From NCBI RefSeq assembly GCF_020745735.1, contig NC_083438.1:32486443-32550442 (forward strand): DNA of 64,000 nt. The letters run 5' to 3'. The stretch comes from Hemiscyllium ocellatum (Eukaryota). Position numbers and translations under genes: made by a program. Positions 35,482 through 60,177 of this stretch are shown here, piece after piece. The notes below the pieces were generated by a model that was not told the DNA's origin, did not search any database, and saw nothing but the letters and a program-made list of their open reading frames with translations. Position 1 is the first letter of the stretch, and every line of letters begins with the position of its first letter.

Positions 35482-35527
35482 ATGAGCGGGGCCCAGCTCC
35501 TCCTCCTCCTCCTCCTCCAGGTGATGG
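35482..35527 (+). CDS. Gene 3 (SRCR/Ig mosaic protein) leader exon 1, MSGAQLLLLLLLQVM
   Basis: accATGA Kozak context, seven Leu codons, donor G|gtgagt (phase 1). Confidence 0.85.
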
Positions 35528-35779
35528 GTGAGTGACTCCGTCATGTGCCGATTGCTTCCTGGTAAAATCCTGGCCGCGGATCTCCAGATCCCTGTTCGAA
35601 ATCTGCCTGGCCGTGCGTGACCTTGCTGGGGCACATCTAACATGGAGGTAGTGGCTACTGTGGGATTTAATAACTGTGAGACATGAGGGGACTCGCTTTG
35701 GCAGGAGGAAGAGAGGAGCAGAAAATTATTGAATCGGAGAAAGACCGCGGAAAGCCACAGGTTCAGGGGGATTTAGGGG

Positions 35780-36870
35780 AAACAACATCTGTGAGTCACA
35801 TAAAATGCTAGGATCCAGTTCAGTGGGTCACAGGAAGGCAAACGGTCTTTGTTTCAAAGGGAATAGGGTATAAAAGTTGGAAGGCTTTTTCTAAAACAGT
35901 TTAAGGCCAGACCAGAGCCGGGATACGGTGAGGAATCTTATGGCCTTGTATCCAAGAAAAGATAGACTGGGCATTGGAGGCAATACAGAGTAGGTTCACT
36001 CAGCTGATTGCAGGTACAGAGAGACTGTCTGGTGAGGGAGAGTTTGAGTCAGTCAGGTCTGTTCTCATTGGAGATTGGAAGAATGAGAGGTGACCTGATT
36101 GAAGACTTTCAGATGACTTGATTTGAGAGTAAATGAGGGAGAGAGCTTGTTTCCCCTTGCATTGTGGGAGAGTCTGGGACCAAAGGGACATTGTTTGAGA
36201 ATAAGGGAGAAGACAGAGATGGGGAGGGATGACTCCTCTCCGAGGGGGAGGAGGAATCTGTGGAATTCTTTTCCATAGAAGGCTGTCAAGATTGGGTCTG
36301 TGAGTATATTTGAGATAATCAAGAAGAGAAATCAGGCTGGGAGATGGGGAGAGTGCAAGATGATCAGATCAGTTGTGATCCAATTGAAAACTGGAGCAGA
36401 TGTGATGGACTGAATGGTTAGGTAGGCAGATTGAGTGGGTGTATTGTAGGACAGACTGAGAGACAGCAGTCACTAAAGCACACAGCTCCCTTGAATTTAT
36501 TCATAGAGTCATAGAGATGTACAGCACATTTCATCCTTCGGCCCAACCTCGTCCATAGCGACCAGATACCCTAACCTAATCTAGTCCCATTTGTCAGCAC
36601 TTGGTCCATATCCCTCCAAACCCTTCTTATTCATATACCCATCCAGATGCCTTTTAAATGTTGTATTGTACCAGCCTCCACCACTTCCTCTGGCAGTTCA
36701 TTCCATACACGTACCACCCGCTGTGTGAAACCGTTGCCCCTTAGGTCCCTTTTATATCTTGCTCCTCTCACCCTAAATCTATGCCCTCTACTTCTCCCCC
36801 ACCCAAGGGAAAATACTTTGTCTATTTGTCCTATCCATGCCCCTCATAATTTTATATCATGTGCTTTCTC
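35780..36870. mobile_element. CR1 3' fragments (plus strand 35780-36430, minus strand 36500-36870)
   Basis: CR1 ORF2-end and 3'UTR motifs on both strands. Confidence 0.7.
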
Positions 36871-37199
36871 TCTTTGTCTTTCTCTCTCTTAAAAGTGCCG
36901 TTGTTTTGACTTTTTTTCTCTCCTAAGTTCCAAAACAATGCAATGGAATATAAAACAGTAATTGCTGCTCTTGGAATTTGAGGAAATCACCTACAATATC
37001 TCAAAAAAGGAGCAGCTCTAATAGTCACAATTTTTTCCCATTCTCCCATCTTGGATTATCCAGAATTGTCCTAGGGGTGCAGAATCTGCGAGGAGGGAGA
37101 TGATGCCGAACTTGTACAATACACTCATTAGACCTCAGCTGAATATTGTGTACAGTGCGGACACCACATTATAGGGAAGATGGGACCACACTGGGGAGA

Positions 37200-37740
37200 C
37201 GGAGAGAGAGTGAGACAGGGAGAGGGACTGAGAGAGAGAAAGAAAGAGAGAGTGAGTGAGAGAGAGCGGGACAGAGAGAGATAAAGAGAGCTGGAAAGTG
37301 AGACTGACAAAGAGCGACAGTGACAGAGTGACAGAGGGAGGGGAGACAGAGGGAGAAACAGTGAGAGAGAGTGACAATAAGACAGAAAGAGAGAGAGACA
37401 GGAAGATAGGGAGAGAGAGAGGGAGACAGAGAAAGACAGAGGGAGAGAAAGAGACAGAGAGAGGGAGACAGAGAGAGAGAGAGAGGGAGAGAGAGAGGGA
37501 GAGAGAGCTGGAAAGTGAGACTGACAAAGAGCGACAGTGACAGAGTGACAGAGGGGAGACAGAGAGAGAAAAACAGTGAGAGAGAGTGACAATAAGACAG
37601 AAAGAGAGAGAGAGAGAGACAGGAAGATAGGGAGAGAGAGAGAGGGAGACAAAGAAAGACAGAGAGGGAGAAAGAGACAGAGAGAGCGAGACTGAGAGAC
37701 AGAGAGAGAGAGAGACAGAGAGAGAGAGAGACTGAGAGAG
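37200..37740. repeat. GA-rich low-complexity tract with an internal ~220-bp duplication, inside a CR1 fragment
   Basis: gagagagctggaaagtgagactgacaaagagcgacagtgacag recurs at ~37285 and ~37503. Confidence 0.8.
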
Positions 37741-38292
37741 TGCAGAAATGATTTACAAGAAGAGTCCCAGGGATGAGAAATTCAGGCAATAAGGATTAAT
37801 TGAAAAAGATGGGGAGTGTTCGCCCTGGGGGAGGAGAAGGCTGAGAGAGGGAGATCCAGCAAGGTTTTCAAAATCACAAAGGGGAAGGGGGAGGGGGCTG
37901 GAGAGAGACGATACGGAGAAGCTGTTCTCACTTGGAAAAGGAACACGAATGAGAAAGGGAGGGGCAAAGATTTCAAGTGAGGTATAAACGGAATGAGGGA
38001 GGGGTTGGGAAAATTAAGGAAAAAGTGTTCCCACCCAGCAAATTGTTAGGGTGTGGCACGTACTGCCTGGATATGTGCTGGGGGCAGGATAAATGGAGAG
38101 GGGGCATTAGATGGGGAGTTGGATAGAAATGGGGTATGAAGGGATTGGGGATGGAGTAAAAACAGGGGATTGGTGATGTGGGGGTAGATTACAGAACCAA
38201 TGTTGGTGCAATTGGTTCATCAGTTTCCCCCCGTTCCATCGCACTTTCCCATCTCGTCTGAGATCTAACCTTTTCGCTGTTTTCTCTTGCAG

Positions 38293-57220: not shown

Positions 57221-57514
57221 AGCCACCGGTCCGGCCAGAGATTACGGCCGCTCCCTCATACCCGGCGTATCTGGTGGGAGAAAACATCACCCTGACGTGT
57301 GTAATCCCAAACCGTTACACACCCGCTCACATCCAGTTTCTGAAAGACTCTGCCCTCGTCACTAACAGCACTGGGAACCAACGGCGATTCACCCACAATG
57401 TCCTCCACCTCACCTCCGTTGACGTGGGGAACTACACATGTTCCTACCAGACCCTGGAGTATGGACAATTGTTCTCATCAGCCCCCAGTCTCCCAGTGAA
57501 AATCGCCCTCACTC
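57221..57514 (+). CDS. Gene 3 IgA3
   Basis: 294 nt, open, phase 1-1. Confidence 0.92.
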
Positions 57515-58582
57515 GTGAGTCTGAATTCCTGCCGCGTCGCACATCAGATGATTTCCGAATCTGATTAACGCAGAAAGAGAGAGACGGAGTTAACATTGCT
57601 GGTTATAAACATAGAAAGCTGTTAGAGAAAGTCAGCAAGTCTGAAGTCTGTGGAATGAGAGAGACAGAAACAGAGCTAATATGACAGAGTTGTACAGTGG
57701 CTCAGTGGTTAGCACTGCTGCCTCAAACGCCAGGGACACAGGATCATATCCAACCTCGGGTGATTATCCATGTGGAGTTTGCATGTTCTCCCTGTGTCTG
57801 TGCGGGTTAACTCCATGTTTCCTCTCACAGTGCAAAGATGTGCATGAAGAGGTAAATTAATTTGGGGAATTGCCCCAAAGTGCCCAGGGATATGTAGATT
57901 AGGGTGGATTAGCCACGGGGTAAAGCAGAGTTACAGGGATAGGATAGGATAGGATAGGGATACATCTGGGTGAGATATACTTCAGAAGGTCAGTGTGGAC
58001 CTGATGCTCCCACACTGTAGGGATTCTATGATTACAGATTATAAACAGAGAGAGTACTGGAACTGGGAGCAGGTTTGGGGCCCTGTACCCGATCAAAGAT
58101 AGTCTTGGCTAATCTCACAGAAGGAGGGACTGTCTGATAAGGGAGGGGTTGAATAGGTCGGCCCTGTCCACAATCCAGTTCAGAAGAATGACCAGGTTGA
58201 AGATTCTTAGATAACTTGATTTGAAGGACGATGGAGAGAGAGTCTGGGACCAGAGGTGTATCATCTCAGAAGAAAGGGGAAGACAGAGACAAGGAGGAAT
58301 TTCTTCTCTCTGAGACAGGGAGCGTATTTGTTGAATTCTTTACTGCAGAGAGCTGACGAGGTTGGATCATTGAGTGTATATTGAAAGCTGAAATGGAGAG
58401 ATTATTAATCAGGAAGGGGGAATCGAGTGGGCTGGGGGGGAAGTGGGGCTGAGGATGATCAGATCAGCTGTTATCCTATTGAATGGTGGAGCAGGTTCGA
58501 TGGGCTGAATGGCCTCCTTCTGCTTCTATGTCTCCCGCTGTGGTAACGTCCTGTCTCTCTCTCTCTCTCTCTGATCTTACAG

Positions 58583-58897
58583 AGCCCCGTGTCAGGCTGG
58601 TGAATGGCAGCGACTCGTGTTCGGGGAGAGTGGAGGTGCAGTACAATGGAGAGTGGGGGACAGTGTGCGACCGTTCCTGGAACATCTCGGAAGCCAGTGT
58701 GGTGTGTCGCCAGCTGGGGTGTGGGTCAGCCGTGGCTGCACTTCCCGGGGCTGGGTTCGGACATGGGTCAGGAATGGTCTGGATGGACGAGGTGTCCTGC
58801 GGAGGGACAGAGCCGAGCCTCTGGGCGTGTCCATTCAGTGGATGGGGCCGGGGCAATTGTGGGCACCAGGAAGATGCCAGTGTGGTCTGTAACCCCA
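58583..58897 (+). CDS. Gene 3 SRCR domain 5
   Basis: 315 nt, open, 8 Cys. Confidence 0.95.
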
Positions 58898-59877
58898 GTA
58901 AGGAATGGGGCAGGGGGAACCATCTGGGAAAGGAGCGGGGGGAATGGGCGGGAGTTACTGTCTCTCACACTCACACACACACACTCACACACACACACAC
59001 ACACTCACACAAATACTCTCACGCTCTCACACACTTTCACACTCACATTCACACCCACACGTACACACATTCACGTTCACACCCCCACACCCCTCCCCCC
59101 ACACAGAGTCACACTCACACACACAGACTCTAACATACACTGACACATATTGTCACACTCACACTCACTCACAATCTCCCTCACTCACGTTCATTCTCAC
59201 ACATTGTCTCTCTCACATTTTCTCTTTCTCTCGTAAATACTCTCCCTCTTAAACTCTCTCAAAGTCTCTCTCTTAAAGTGTGTCTCTCTTTCACATTCTC
59301 TCTCACACTGCCTTTCTCATACTCTCTATCACACACTCTTCAGCAGCCTCTCTCACACAGTCTTACACTCTCACTCACACTCTTTCACTCTCACACACTC
59401 TGTCTCACACACTGTCTTTCACCCATACTCTCTCACACACTGTCTCACATTTCTCTCACAGTGCCTCTCTCACAAACCCTCTCTGTCTCTCTCTCTGTCT
59501 CTCTTTCTCTCACATACTCTCCCTTTCTATCTCACACACGCTCTCTCACACTTTTTTTTTGCACACTGTCTGTCCCTCAAACACAAATACTCTCTCCCTC
59601 TCTCTCTCTCACCCCTTTCTCTCTCAGTCTCTTTCTCCCCCTCTCTCTCCCACTCCCTCTGTCTCTCCCTCTCTCTGTCAGTCTCACACGGCCTCTCTCA
59701 CAATAACCCCAATCCCTCTCTCTTTACAAACTGCATACCCTCTCCCCATGAGGGGGGAGTGGTGACTGTGATGGATGTGTCCCACAGTGATAGCGGTGAG
59801 GGGAGTGGGGGGGGGGGGGGGAGTGAATGAGACACTAATCCTGATGACCTTGTGTCCTCGCTCCCTCCCCCCCCCAG

Positions 59878-60177
59878 GCTCCCTGCTCCGACCCTTCATC
59901 ACAATCACACCGAACAGCCCCCTCCACACGTCTGGGATCCCCCTGGCAATCCAGTGCCTGGCTCCGAAGGGATACCGTGGGGGCCGCTTCCGCATCCTGA
60001 GGGGTACGTCTGTGGCCAAGGAGCACCGGCTGGACTCCGGTAGAAACGGAGCTGTTTTCCTGTACCGTAACGTGAGCACCAGCAACAGGGGGAGCTACAG
60101 CTGCCTGTACCAGAGGCTGGTCGCTGGCTTCTGGGTCACCTTCCGGGCCAGCCCCTCCATTCCCATCCGGGTTGTAG
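59878..60177 (+). CDS. Gene 3 IgB3
   Basis: 300 nt, open, phase 1-1; the gene continues beyond the window. Confidence 0.92.

What the first reader, a model, noticed from the sequence alone, without database searches (positions are those of the whole stretch)
35482..60177. Mosaic protein alternating group B SRCR and LRC-like Ig domains: SP-SRCR-SRCR-[Ig-SRCR-Ig]x3-...
Seen: 13 open phase-1 exons give at least 1142 aa with 5 eight-Cys SRCR domains and 6 Trp-less C2-type Ig domains of two types. No leader, TM or stop exon lies between units, so this reads as one gene continuing past the window. Established: group B SRCR arrays define CD163, WC1, DMBT1, CD5 and CD6. Ig domains with a KP/RP start, F-x-x-x-K/R C strand and S-x-P-S-x-P/S-x-x-I end resemble LILR, KIR, GPVI and A1BG. 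The one well-known Ig+SRCR chimera I recall is mouse FCRLS, with a single terminal SRCR. A regularly interdigitated SRCR/Ig array is not an architecture I recognise. Inference: a shark-specific hybrid pattern-recognition/Ig receptor. This is the best candidate for an undescribed system in the window.
Basis: partly seen in the sequence, partly recalled or inferred. Interest (0 to 1): 0.92.

Follow-up and report, generated by a model that had tools for sequence, protein, structure and literature searches.

The report
Shark receptor gene mixing SRCR and Ig domains
This is the first half of a real, already annotated but unstudied epaulette-shark gene for a giant membrane protein that alternates scavenger-receptor (SRCR) domains with LILR/KIR-like Ig domains. 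The layout is not shark-specific: it occurs widely in fishes and seems never to have been described as a family.

Summary
Thirteen phase 1-1 exons on the + strand (35482-60177) splice into 1142 aa without a stop: split leader, 5 eight-Cys SRCR domains and 6 Ig domains of two types.

This product is 100% identical to residues 1-1142 of RefSeq XP_060708561.1, "uncharacterized protein LOC132833917" of Hemiscyllium ocellatum (2103 aa). The gene continues past the window with a fourth Ig-SRCR-Ig unit, six more Ig exons, one transmembrane (TM) exon and a short tail with NPVY.

The Ig domains are LRC-type by profile and fold (LILR, NKp46, OSCAR, GPVI, IGSF1, A1BG). The ~6 kb unit is a recent tandem repeat that evolves in concert within each species, with exons under purifying selection.

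The "shark-specific" claim fails. SRCR/Ig mosaics with the same Ig types occur in sharks, rays, bowfin, tarpon, many teleosts and a caecilian. All carry automatic names (DMBT1-like, M130-like, IGSF1-like). One batoid transcript contig carries such a mosaic in a single uninterrupted reading frame.

I found no paper describing the family. One paper calls mouse FCRLS a "unique" Ig/SRCR chimera. Another reports no LRC homologues in sharks.

Most likely function, inferred only: an endocytic scavenger or pattern-recognition receptor. Interest is moderate.

The parts
35482..35527 (+). Leader exon 1: ATG plus 45 nt, poly-Leu core, GTGAGT donor, phase 1
   Evidence: Identical to the N-terminus of XP_060708561.1.
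38293..38328 (+). Leader exon 2: 36-nt mini-exon, phase 1-1
   Evidence: Needed for the 100% match to the RefSeq protein.
39610..39918 (+). SRCR-1 exon: group B, 8 Cys, cation-site residues DD/DE/N/E intact
   Evidence: Pfam SRCR E = 7.6e-37; splice sites; cation-site mapping.
40861..41169 (+). SRCR-2 exon: 98% aa copy of SRCR-1 from a 1251-bp tandem duplication
43093..43370 (+). Decayed IgB-type pseudo-exon (one frameshift, in-frame stops), skipped in the gene model
   Evidence: tblastn with the first IgB-like domain of the Stegostoma orthologue: 51% identity over 63 aa, E = 5e-17, split over two frames with stops. A weak IgA hit falls at the same place.
44625..44918 (+). IgA-1 exon (unit 1)
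46709..47023 (+). SRCR-3 exon (unit 1): the D1020-equivalent residue is Arg
48017..48316 (+). IgB-1 exon (unit 1)
50877..51170 (+). IgA-2 exon (unit 2)
52249..52563 (+). SRCR-4 exon (unit 2)
54481..54780 (+). IgB-2 exon (unit 2)
57221..57514 (+). IgA-3 exon (unit 3)
58583..58897 (+). SRCR-5 exon (unit 3)
   Evidence: It is 99% identical to SRCR-3.
59878..60177 (+). IgB-3 exon (unit 3), the last coding exon inside the window
60178..64000 (+). Start of the intron leading to unit 4. It repeats the intron sequence of units 1-2 and carries a LINE-like insertion (ORFs at 62703-63851). IgA-4 lies about 1.5 kb past the window end.
   Evidence: Repeat families D4, D5, D9, D12; ORFs; position of IgA-4 in L001.

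Best explanation
The window holds the 5' 54% of a single gene, LOC132833917 of Hemiscyllium ocellatum. It has 24 coding exons over about 63 kb and encodes a 2103-aa type I membrane glycoprotein. The protein consists of a split signal peptide, two near-identical tip SRCR-B domains and four tandem [IgA-SRCR-IgB] units (three in the window). These are followed by six further Ig domains, one uncharged TM helix and a 33-residue tail ending ...FDIINPVYSTDIGS. Every domain is one symmetrical phase 1-1 exon, and domains abut with roughly one-residue linkers.

The array grows and shrinks by unequal crossing-over or gene conversion. Units include their introns, are 90-95% identical and cluster by species. 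Exon loss is tolerated, as the decayed IgB exon at 43.1 kb shows.

Shown: gene structure, domain identities, LRC-type fold of the Ig domains, purifying selection and wide occurrence of the architecture.

Inferred: it acts as a cell-surface endocytic scavenger or pattern-recognition receptor. The tip SRCRs keep the complete acidic dual-cation site that DMBT1 SRCRs use for Ca2+-bridged ligand binding, so they are the likeliest ligand heads. The unit SRCRs carry Arg at the shared Asp (the D1020 equivalent), so they probably bind differently or act as spacers. IgB(n)-IgA(n+1) pairs form LILR/NKp46-like two-domain modules that could add a second specificity. NPVY recruits PTB-domain adaptors for clathrin uptake or engulfment, as in LDLR, LRP1 and MEGF10.
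For: - Exons and reading frame.
- 100% identity to XP_060708561.1 residues 1-1142, with the window DNA identical to CM036696.1.
- Remaining exons, single TM and tail.
- Only SRCR and Ig families match in Pfam.
- Orthologues with the same order in Chiloscyllium punctatum (91%), C. plagiosum and Stegostoma.
- Unit repeats that include introns.
- dN/dS of 0.15-0.9 (10 of 11 pairs at or below 0.6) with every exon open, while one skipped exon has decayed.
- Units cluster by species.
- LRC-type Ig. The IgB profile hits PirB, LILRA6/B1/B2/B3, FcaRI, OSCAR, NKp46 and KIR. The AF2 IgB-IgA pair has pLDDT 93. Its Foldseek top PDB hits are LILRB4, NKp46, OSCAR, LILRB2 and GPVI, and the top 24 Swiss-Prot hits are all LRC members.
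- Cation-site mapping against DMBT1 residues (PMC7043408).
- NPxY is kept in Hemiscyllium, Chiloscyllium, Stegostoma, Mustelus and Cetorhinus.
- An mRNA-like Logan contig from a batoid paralogue carries 4 SRCR and 9 Ig domains in one uninterrupted 1469-codon ORF.
Against: - No transcript of this gene or of its orthologues was seen. The RefSeq protein is a computed model, and two protein searches aimed at transcript fragments found none.
- With all exons in phase 1-1, real mRNAs may skip units.
- No ligand, expression site or uptake has been tested, so the function rests on motif analogy.
- NPVY lacks the LDLR-type aromatic residue at -5 (Ile instead), and one relative has NPIS.
- The signal peptide has no basic n-region.
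- AF2 did not fold the SRCR inside the unit (pLDDT about 30), so nothing can be said about Ig-SRCR packing.
Confidence: 0.62

Rival explanations
1. It is an LRC-style immunoregulatory (inhibitory or activating) receptor that signals through ITIM or ITAM pathways, with the SRCR domains as accessories.
For: The Ig domains are LRC-type. The second leader exon is 36 nt, as in KIR, LILR and FCAR (own knowledge). The family is multigenic in sharks, for example a cluster of 25 protein sequences in Cetorhinus.
Against: The tail has no ITIM, ITSM or ITAM, and the TM has no charged residue for adaptor pairing. The conserved tail motif is NPxY.
Confidence: 0.15
2. It mainly yields a soluble DMBT1/CD5L-like agglutinin or opsonin, through shedding or alternative splicing that skips the TM exon.
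For: The batoid transcript L003 ends with a stop right after an Ig domain and has no TM. SRCR-B proteins such as DMBT1 and CD5L are secreted. The tip SRCRs keep the DMBT1 cation site.
Against: The RefSeq models of this gene and of its Chiloscyllium, Stegostoma, Mustelus and Cetorhinus relatives all end in a TM plus a conserved tail. There are no CUB or ZP domains and no SID linkers.
Confidence: 0.13
3. It is a gene-model artefact or a decaying array. Either separate SRCR and Ig genes were fused by prediction, or the exons are no longer expressed.
For: Only a computed model exists for this species. One exon in the array is already a pseudo-exon. The region is rich in repeats and LINEs.
Against: - No leader, TM or stop exon lies between the domains.
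- Strand and phase are uniform, and the splice sites are intact.
- The duplicated unit itself contains Ig+SRCR+Ig.
- dN/dS is below 1, and exons are more conserved than most of their flanks.
- The same layout occurs in more than 25 species from different annotation pipelines.
- A continuous mosaic ORF sits on a 4.7-kb transcript-like contig.
Confidence: 0.07

Closest known systems
[quoted passage not shown]
   Same: Ig-like domains and a group B SRCR domain in one polypeptide, with a split leader. [quoted passage not shown]
   Different: FCRLS has FCRL-type Ig domains, a 21-bp second leader exon, a single C-terminal SRCR and no TM, so it is secreted. The shark gene has LRC-type Ig domains, a 36-nt second leader exon, 6 SRCRs interleaved with 14 Ig domains, a TM and an NPVY tail. 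The two are most likely independent chimeras.
CD163 / CD163L1 / WC1 (membrane group B SRCR receptors)
   Same: Type I membrane proteins with arrays of single-exon 8-Cys SRCR domains and a short tail carrying an internalisation signal. CD163 is the best whole-chain PDB match of the SRCR exon.
   Different: Their ectodomains are SRCR-only, with PST linkers. Here SRCRs alternate with Ig pairs and have almost no linkers. The tail motif is NPxY rather than YxxPhi (own knowledge for CD163).
DMBT1 / SALSA / gp340
   Same: SRCR-B domains with the GRVEV...W motif. The tip SRCRs keep the complete D-D / D-D(E) / N / E cation site. Automatic annotation names most family members "DMBT1-like".
   Different: There are no SID spacers and no CUB or ZP domains. 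The protein is membrane-anchored. The unit SRCRs have Arg at the D1020 position, and the D1020A mutation abolishes DMBT1 binding.
LRC receptors and relatives (LILR/PIR-B, KIR, NKp46, OSCAR, GPVI, FcaRI, TARM1, IGSF1, A1BG)
   Same: Trp-less C2 Ig domains with G-x-Y-x-C-x-Y, best profile and fold matches, phase-1 exons and a 36-nt second leader exon.
   Different: LRC ectodomains are Ig-only and mostly signal through ITIMs or charged-TM adaptors. This protein has SRCRs, an uncharged TM and no ITIM. Synteny with the LRC was not tested. Akula et al. 2014 reported no LRC homologues in sharks.
Teleost, holostean and caecilian "DMBT1-like / M130-like / IGSF1-like" predicted proteins (e.g. Amia XP_066566105.1, Epinephelus XP_049417209.1, Geotrypetes XP_033817435.1)
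   Same: They mix SRCR-B domains with the same two Ig types. The Amia protein reads S-S-b-b-S-a-b-S-a-b plus a TM.
   Different: The order and number of modules and the tails differ. Ig identity to the shark domains is only about 25-30%. None is characterised.

Membership tests
SRCR superfamily, group B | Domain of about 100-110 aa matching the SRCR profile (PF00530) | tested here: met
   E = 8e-37 to 2e-35 for the four window SRCR exons scanned, full-length matches. Six stretches in the full protein.
SRCR superfamily, group B | Eight cysteines per domain (group A has six) | tested here: met
   Eight Cys in each of the five translated exons.
SRCR superfamily, group B | Each domain encoded by a single exon | tested here: met
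   Exons of 309 or 315 nt bounded by AG and GT. They match the domain limits in the RefSeq protein.
LRC-type Ig receptors (LILR/KIR/NKp46/OSCAR/GPVI/IGSF1/A1BG) | Ig domains closest in sequence profile and fold to LRC domains | tested here: met
   The IgB profile hits PirB (4e-27), LILRA6 (5e-21), LILRB1-3, FcaRI, OSCAR, NKp46 and KIR. The top Foldseek PDB hits and the top 24 Swiss-Prot hits are LRC members. The IgA profile is less specific: FCRL5, titin, then PirB and LILR.
LRC-type Ig receptors (LILR/KIR/NKp46/OSCAR/GPVI/IGSF1/A1BG) | Split leader with a 36-bp second exon | tested here: met
   36-nt exon at 38293-38328. The rule itself comes from my own knowledge; I could not confirm it in the paper library.
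LRC-type Ig receptors (LILR/KIR/NKp46/OSCAR/GPVI/IGSF1/A1BG) | Ectodomain made of Ig domains only | tested here: not met
   Six SRCR domains are interleaved with the Ig domains.
LRC-type Ig receptors (LILR/KIR/NKp46/OSCAR/GPVI/IGSF1/A1BG) | ITIM(s) in the tail, or a charged TM residue for FcRgamma/DAP12 pairing | tested here: not met
   The TM is uncharged, and the tail has NPVY but no ITIM, ITSM or ITAM.
LRC-type Ig receptors (LILR/KIR/NKp46/OSCAR/GPVI/IGSF1/A1BG) | Location in a region syntenic with the LRC | not tested
   Only a V-set gene upstream was seen. No LRC marker genes were examined.
FCRLS | 21-bp second leader exon of the FCR/FCRL family | tested here: not met
   36 nt here. The 21-bp rule is stated in PMC7940838 and PMC2413239.
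FCRLS | Single C-terminal SRCR after the Ig domains, and no TM (soluble) | tested here: not met
   Six SRCRs, N-terminal and interleaved, plus a TM.
DMBT1 | CUB and ZP domains and SID spacers after the SRCR array | tested here: not met
   Only SRCR and Ig families match in Pfam. Domains abut directly.
CD163/WC1 family | SRCR-only ectodomain with a TM and an endocytic tail | tested here: not met
   A TM and a putative endocytic NPVY are present, but 14 of the 20 ectodomains are Ig.

The most novel reading that the evidence does not exclude
This gene belongs to a large, unrecognised receptor family found across jawed vertebrates. In it, LRC-type Ig pairs and group B SRCR domains are shuffled as symmetrical phase-1 exons. 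If so, LRC-type Ig receptors predate the split between cartilaginous and bony fishes, contrary to the published view that they arose with bony fish. The Ig-only LRC receptors of tetrapods (LILR, KIR, IGSF1, A1BG) would then descend from such mosaics by loss of the SRCR exons, and Ig/SRCR chimerism would be ancient rather than an FCRLS oddity.
Probability: 0.2. Interest if true: 0.8.

Novelty: new variant of a known kind. Interest (0 to 1): 0.55.

Why it matters
Two published statements are affected. FCRLS is described as a unique Ig/SRCR-B chimera (PMC7940838). Sharks are said to lack LRC- and FCRL-type receptors, which were therefore placed at the base of bony fishes (PMC4016189).

This shark locus and its relatives show clear LRC-type Ig domains in elasmobranchs. 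Here they are embedded in SRCR mosaics, and the same mosaic design recurs in ray-finned fishes and a caecilian under misleading automatic names. Recognising the family would improve annotation and give a testable candidate for an early innate receptor that combines two recognition modules. It would also reopen the question of where LRC receptors came from.

The locus is also a clean example of domain arrays evolving by duplication, homogenisation and decay of phase-symmetrical exons. The function remains untested.

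Tried and rejected
- **Transcript fragments, first try.** A word-index protein search with one IgA-SRCR-IgB unit was swamped by bird and reptile DMBT1 fragments and told me nothing.
- **Transcript fragments, second try.** The same tool restricted to the IgB-IgA part returned only a nested C. 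plagiosum model. No transcript of this gene or its orthologues was found.
- **Structure of a whole unit.** AF2 gave good Ig domains but an unfolded SRCR (pLDDT 25-35). I drew no conclusion on Ig-SRCR packing. The Foldseek run on that model only repeated the Ig result.
- **Literature.** Searches combining SRCR, Ig, shark, elasmobranch, teleost, LITR and LRC found no description of the family. One call failed on a too-short term.
- **The 36-bp leader rule.** I could not verify the LRC rule in the library. The one hit for "36 bp" was irrelevant, and the Xenopus FcR paper gives only the 30/21-bp FcR rule.
- **Ig-only shark relatives.** The best Ig-only hit (P0004, on the Mustelus contig) is an N-terminally truncated model, so it cannot show whether sharks have Ig-only members.
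- **Rejected readings.** DMBT1 orthologue: no CUB, ZP or SID. FCRLS orthologue: wrong leader exon, wrong Ig type, and a TM is present. Paired ITIM/ITAM receptor: no such motifs.

Full report
**Observation.** An open-frame scan and a splice-site scan of 34-64 kb recover eleven domain-sized exons on the + strand. All have a pyrimidine tract and AG acceptor and a GTAAG or GTGAGT donor, and all are in phase 1-1. Upstream lie an ATG exon (35482-35527) and a 36-nt mini-exon (38293-38328). Joined, the 13 exons give 3427 nt, which is 1142 codons without a stop.

Pfam scores the four SRCR exons scanned at E = 8e-37 to 2e-35 over the full SRCR model. The fifth (58583-58897) is 99% identical to the third. 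The IgA exons match Ig_2/Ig_3. The IgB exons match Ig_C19orf38 (HIDE1) best, then Ig_3. Each SRCR has eight Cys. Both Ig types have Phe where the C-strand Trp normally sits, plus a G-x-Y-x-C-x-Y F strand. IgA and IgB do not detect each other at E < 1e-3. The SRCRs also fall into two types: the tip pair is 59% identical to the unit SRCRs.

**Identity of the locus.** A full HMMER scan of 1.84 billion representatives with IgB-2 found 352 proteins. The best cluster contains XP_060708561.1, [quoted passage not shown], 2103 aa. Its residues 1-1142 are 100% identical to my 13-exon product. The encoding contig is CM036696.1 of GCA_020745735.1. Its DNA is identical to window 35482-64000 with no mismatch over 28,519 nt.

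So the window is epaulette-shark DNA. An independent gene predictor uses the same 13 exons, mini-exon included.

**The rest of the gene.** Aligning the protein to the 83-kb locus places the remaining exons, given here in window-equivalent coordinates:

- A fourth IgA-SRCR-IgB unit at 65472-68558.
- Four similar D-type Ig exons at 75072-89724.
- Two membrane-proximal Ig exons at 92209 and 94360.
- A TM exon at 95957-96085.
- A tail exon at 98831-98914.

That makes 24 coding exons over about 63 kb. Pfam sees only SRCR and Ig families, with no CUB or ZP. There is one hydrophobic TM segment (residues about 2050-2070) and no second leader-like or TM-like exon anywhere. The TM is uncharged. The tail (...EEFDIINPVYSTDIGS) has NPVY and no ITIM or ITAM. 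Domains abut with roughly one residue between them.

**How the array evolves.**

- The ~6.3-kb unit is repeated with its introns at 90-95% identity, and the two tip SRCRs are a 1251-bp tandem copy.
- Between copies, dN/dS is 0.15-0.9, at or below 0.6 in 10 of 11 pairs. The counts are small: 3-21 differences per pair.
- The SRCR exons differ by 1-2% and the Ig exons by 4-7%. Flanking 400-nt stretches differ by 3-28%.
- Synonymous divergence is lower in the SRCR exons than in the Ig exons, which suggests local gene conversion.
- In a maximum-likelihood tree of units from four species, the Stegostoma, C. punctatum and C. plagiosum units each cluster by species. The four Hemiscyllium units are unresolved. 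This means concerted evolution or repeated independent duplication.
- Unit numbers differ: 4 in Hemiscyllium, 3 in C. punctatum, 5-6 in Stegostoma.
- Between SRCR-2 and IgA-1 lies a decayed IgB-type exon (43093-43370) with a frameshift and in-frame stops. It is 51% identical (E = 5e-17) to the intact first IgB-like domain of the Stegostoma orthologue.
- That pseudo-exon shows what unselected exons look like at this locus. It also shows that phase-symmetrical exons can be dropped without harm.
- A LINE-like insertion (ORFs at 62703-63851) sits in the intron before unit 4.

**What kind of Ig domains.**

- The single IgB exon weakly prefers PirB, OSCAR, LAIR1 and CHIR-AB1. IgA prefers titin, FCRL5 and FcεRIα.
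- A 20-sequence IgB profile (A1) hits PirB (4e-27), FCRL5, LILRA6, LILRB3/B1/B2, FcαRI, OSCAR, NKp46 and KIR3DL1.
- The IgA profile (A2) is more generic but also covers LILR domains end to end.
- AlphaFold2 of an IgB(n)-IgA(n+1) pair gave pLDDT 93 and pTM 0.73.
- The best Foldseek PDB matches to that model are LILRB4, NKp46, OSCAR, LILRB2 D3D4, GPVI and KIR2DL2.
- The top 24 reviewed Swiss-Prot matches are all LRC-family proteins (TARM1, NKp46, LILRB4, GPVI, IGSF1, OSCAR, A1BG, LILRAs). FcγRIII first appears at rank 25.
- TM-scores are about 0.43-0.47 for the pair, because the elbow angle differs. Fold class, not geometry, is what is shared.

The 36-nt second leader exon fits the LRC habit (my own knowledge). 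It differs from the 21-bp FCR/FCRL rule.

**What kind of SRCR.** The exon matches CD163, PIT54, CD5L, CD6, LOXL2 and DMBT1 chains. It meets the group B criteria of eight Cys and one exon per domain.

Reichhardt et al. (PMC7043408) define a dual cation site in DMBT1 SRCR8 formed by D1019, D1020, E1086, D1058, D1059 and N1081. The D1019A and D1020A mutations abolish binding. I confirmed the residue offsets on a DMBT1 record and mapped them onto the shark domains.

- SRCR-1 and SRCR-2 read DD/DE/N/E, so the site is intact.
- All unit SRCRs read DR/DE/N/E in Hemiscyllium and C. punctatum, and mostly GR in Stegostoma. The shared Asp is replaced by Arg.
- Carcharhiniform, lamniform and batoid relatives mostly keep DD.

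The tip SRCRs are thus the best candidates for canonical Ca2+-bridged ligand binding. The unit SRCRs of this orectolobiform lineage probably work differently.

**Is the layout shark-specific or unknown?** No to the first. Of the 150 best representatives found with IgB, 43 combine SRCR with these Ig types. Named examples:

- Sharks: Chiloscyllium, Stegostoma, Scyliorhinus, Mustelus, Cetorhinus (a cluster of 25 protein sequences), Heterodontus, Heptranchias.
- Batoids: Pristis, Narcine, Hemitrygon, Mobula.
- Other ray-finned fishes: bowfin, tarpon, and teleosts including Salminus, Pygocentrus, Cyprinus, Epinephelus, Leuresthes, Engraulis, Gambusia, Collichthys, Dissostichus, Coilia and Sarotherodon.
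- A tetrapod: the caecilian Geotrypetes.

All carry automatic names: DMBT1-like, M130-like, WC1.1-like, IGSF1-like, perlecan-like or uncharacterized.

One member is known only from a Logan assembly of run SRR6291316. It is a 4733-nt contig with a 105-nt 5' end, an uninterrupted 1469-codon ORF and a 218-nt 3' end. It encodes S-a-a-S-a-a-b-S-a-a-a-S-a and is 61% identical to Pristis LOC127566442. Such an intron-free ORF across 13 modules is best read as mRNA. At least one family member therefore joins SRCR and Ig domains in a transcript. It is a paralogue, not this gene.

**Literature.** Eight successful searches found no description of this family (one search was for SRCR structures). [quoted passage not shown] It places their origin in bony fish. 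The library lacks most subscription journals, so a description elsewhere cannot be excluded.

**Mechanism (inferred).** The protein is a roughly 20-domain, nearly linker-free ectodomain anchored by a plain TM helix.

- The tip SRCRs bind polyanionic, microbial or altered-self ligands through bridged cations, as DMBT1 does.
- LRC-like Ig pairs may add a protein ligand.
- NPxY is conserved across three shark orders. It would engage PTB-domain adaptors for clathrin uptake or engulfment, as established for LDLR, LRP1 and MEGF10.

I put about 0.9 on the gene structure and about 0.45 on this functional reading. Rivals are an LRC-like signalling receptor (no motifs support it), a mainly soluble agglutinin (the batoid transcript lacks a TM) and an annotation artefact (unlikely).

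**Verdict.** It is a new variant built from known modules rather than a new kind of system. It is already present in RefSeq but uncharacterised, and it is not shark-specific. Its value lies in exposing an overlooked receptor family and in showing LRC-type Ig domains in elasmobranchs.

**Earlier scan notes.** Earlier notes on this same window and genome agreed with or added to this report. Notes s1-228608 and s1-228609 concern the mini-exon and the fossil exon. Notes s1-213669 and s1-213813 concern the Ig exons and the tail beyond the window. All were checked here.

Noticed in passing
window 21085-21498 (+), gene ending near 25600: A V-set Ig exon (...LPCTYSG...W...YDCQ...) belongs to a separate upstream gene on the same strand. 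The collection lists it as a 224-aa V-set product ending at L001:121.
   Followed up: partly
window 5357-5656 (-): An open stretch looks like an Ig-like domain without the canonical Cys-Trp-Cys. I did not examine it further.
   Followed up: no
window 8251-10202 and 18621-19429: Minisatellite arrays translate as long repeated peptides (SLSTDPPTV..., RVSAEGVPHC..., NQRVSPP...). They produce long spurious ORFs.
   Followed up: no
window 37128-37789, 38792-39587, 40190-40838, 47242-47886, 53864-54328, 59277-59765: CT/GA-rich simple repeats sit in the introns next to the SRCR and IgB exons. They produce long stop-free frames on both strands (LSLSLS..., HTHTHT...) that a mechanical ORF list reports as 130-260 aa ORFs.
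   Followed up: partly
window 46709-47023, 52249-52563, 58583-58897 versus the Ig exons: The unit SRCR exons have much lower synonymous divergence (pS 0.014-0.041) than the Ig exons of the same units (pS 0.06-0.13). This points to gene conversion focused on the SRCR exon, not just purifying selection.
   Followed up: partly
window 62703-63851 (+): LINE-like ORFs (an endonuclease-type stretch followed by another long ORF) are inserted in sense orientation in the intron after IgB-3. They displace IgA-4 to about 1.5 kb beyond the window end. Similar retroelement-tail fragments recur once per unit (49335-49676, 55706-56047, 61337-61660).
   Followed up: partly
L003 (Logan SRR6291316 contig, 4733 nt): A transcript-like contig from an unnamed batoid encodes a 1469-aa SRCR/Ig mosaic with a signal peptide but no TM. 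This suggests secreted members or isoforms in the family.
   Followed up: partly
L002 (Chiloscyllium plagiosum CM013002.1): The orthologue is annotated twice: as a 1415-aa "perlecan-like" protein and as a nested 293-aa IgB-IgA gene (LOC122544198). Annotation of this family is unstable.
   Followed up: no
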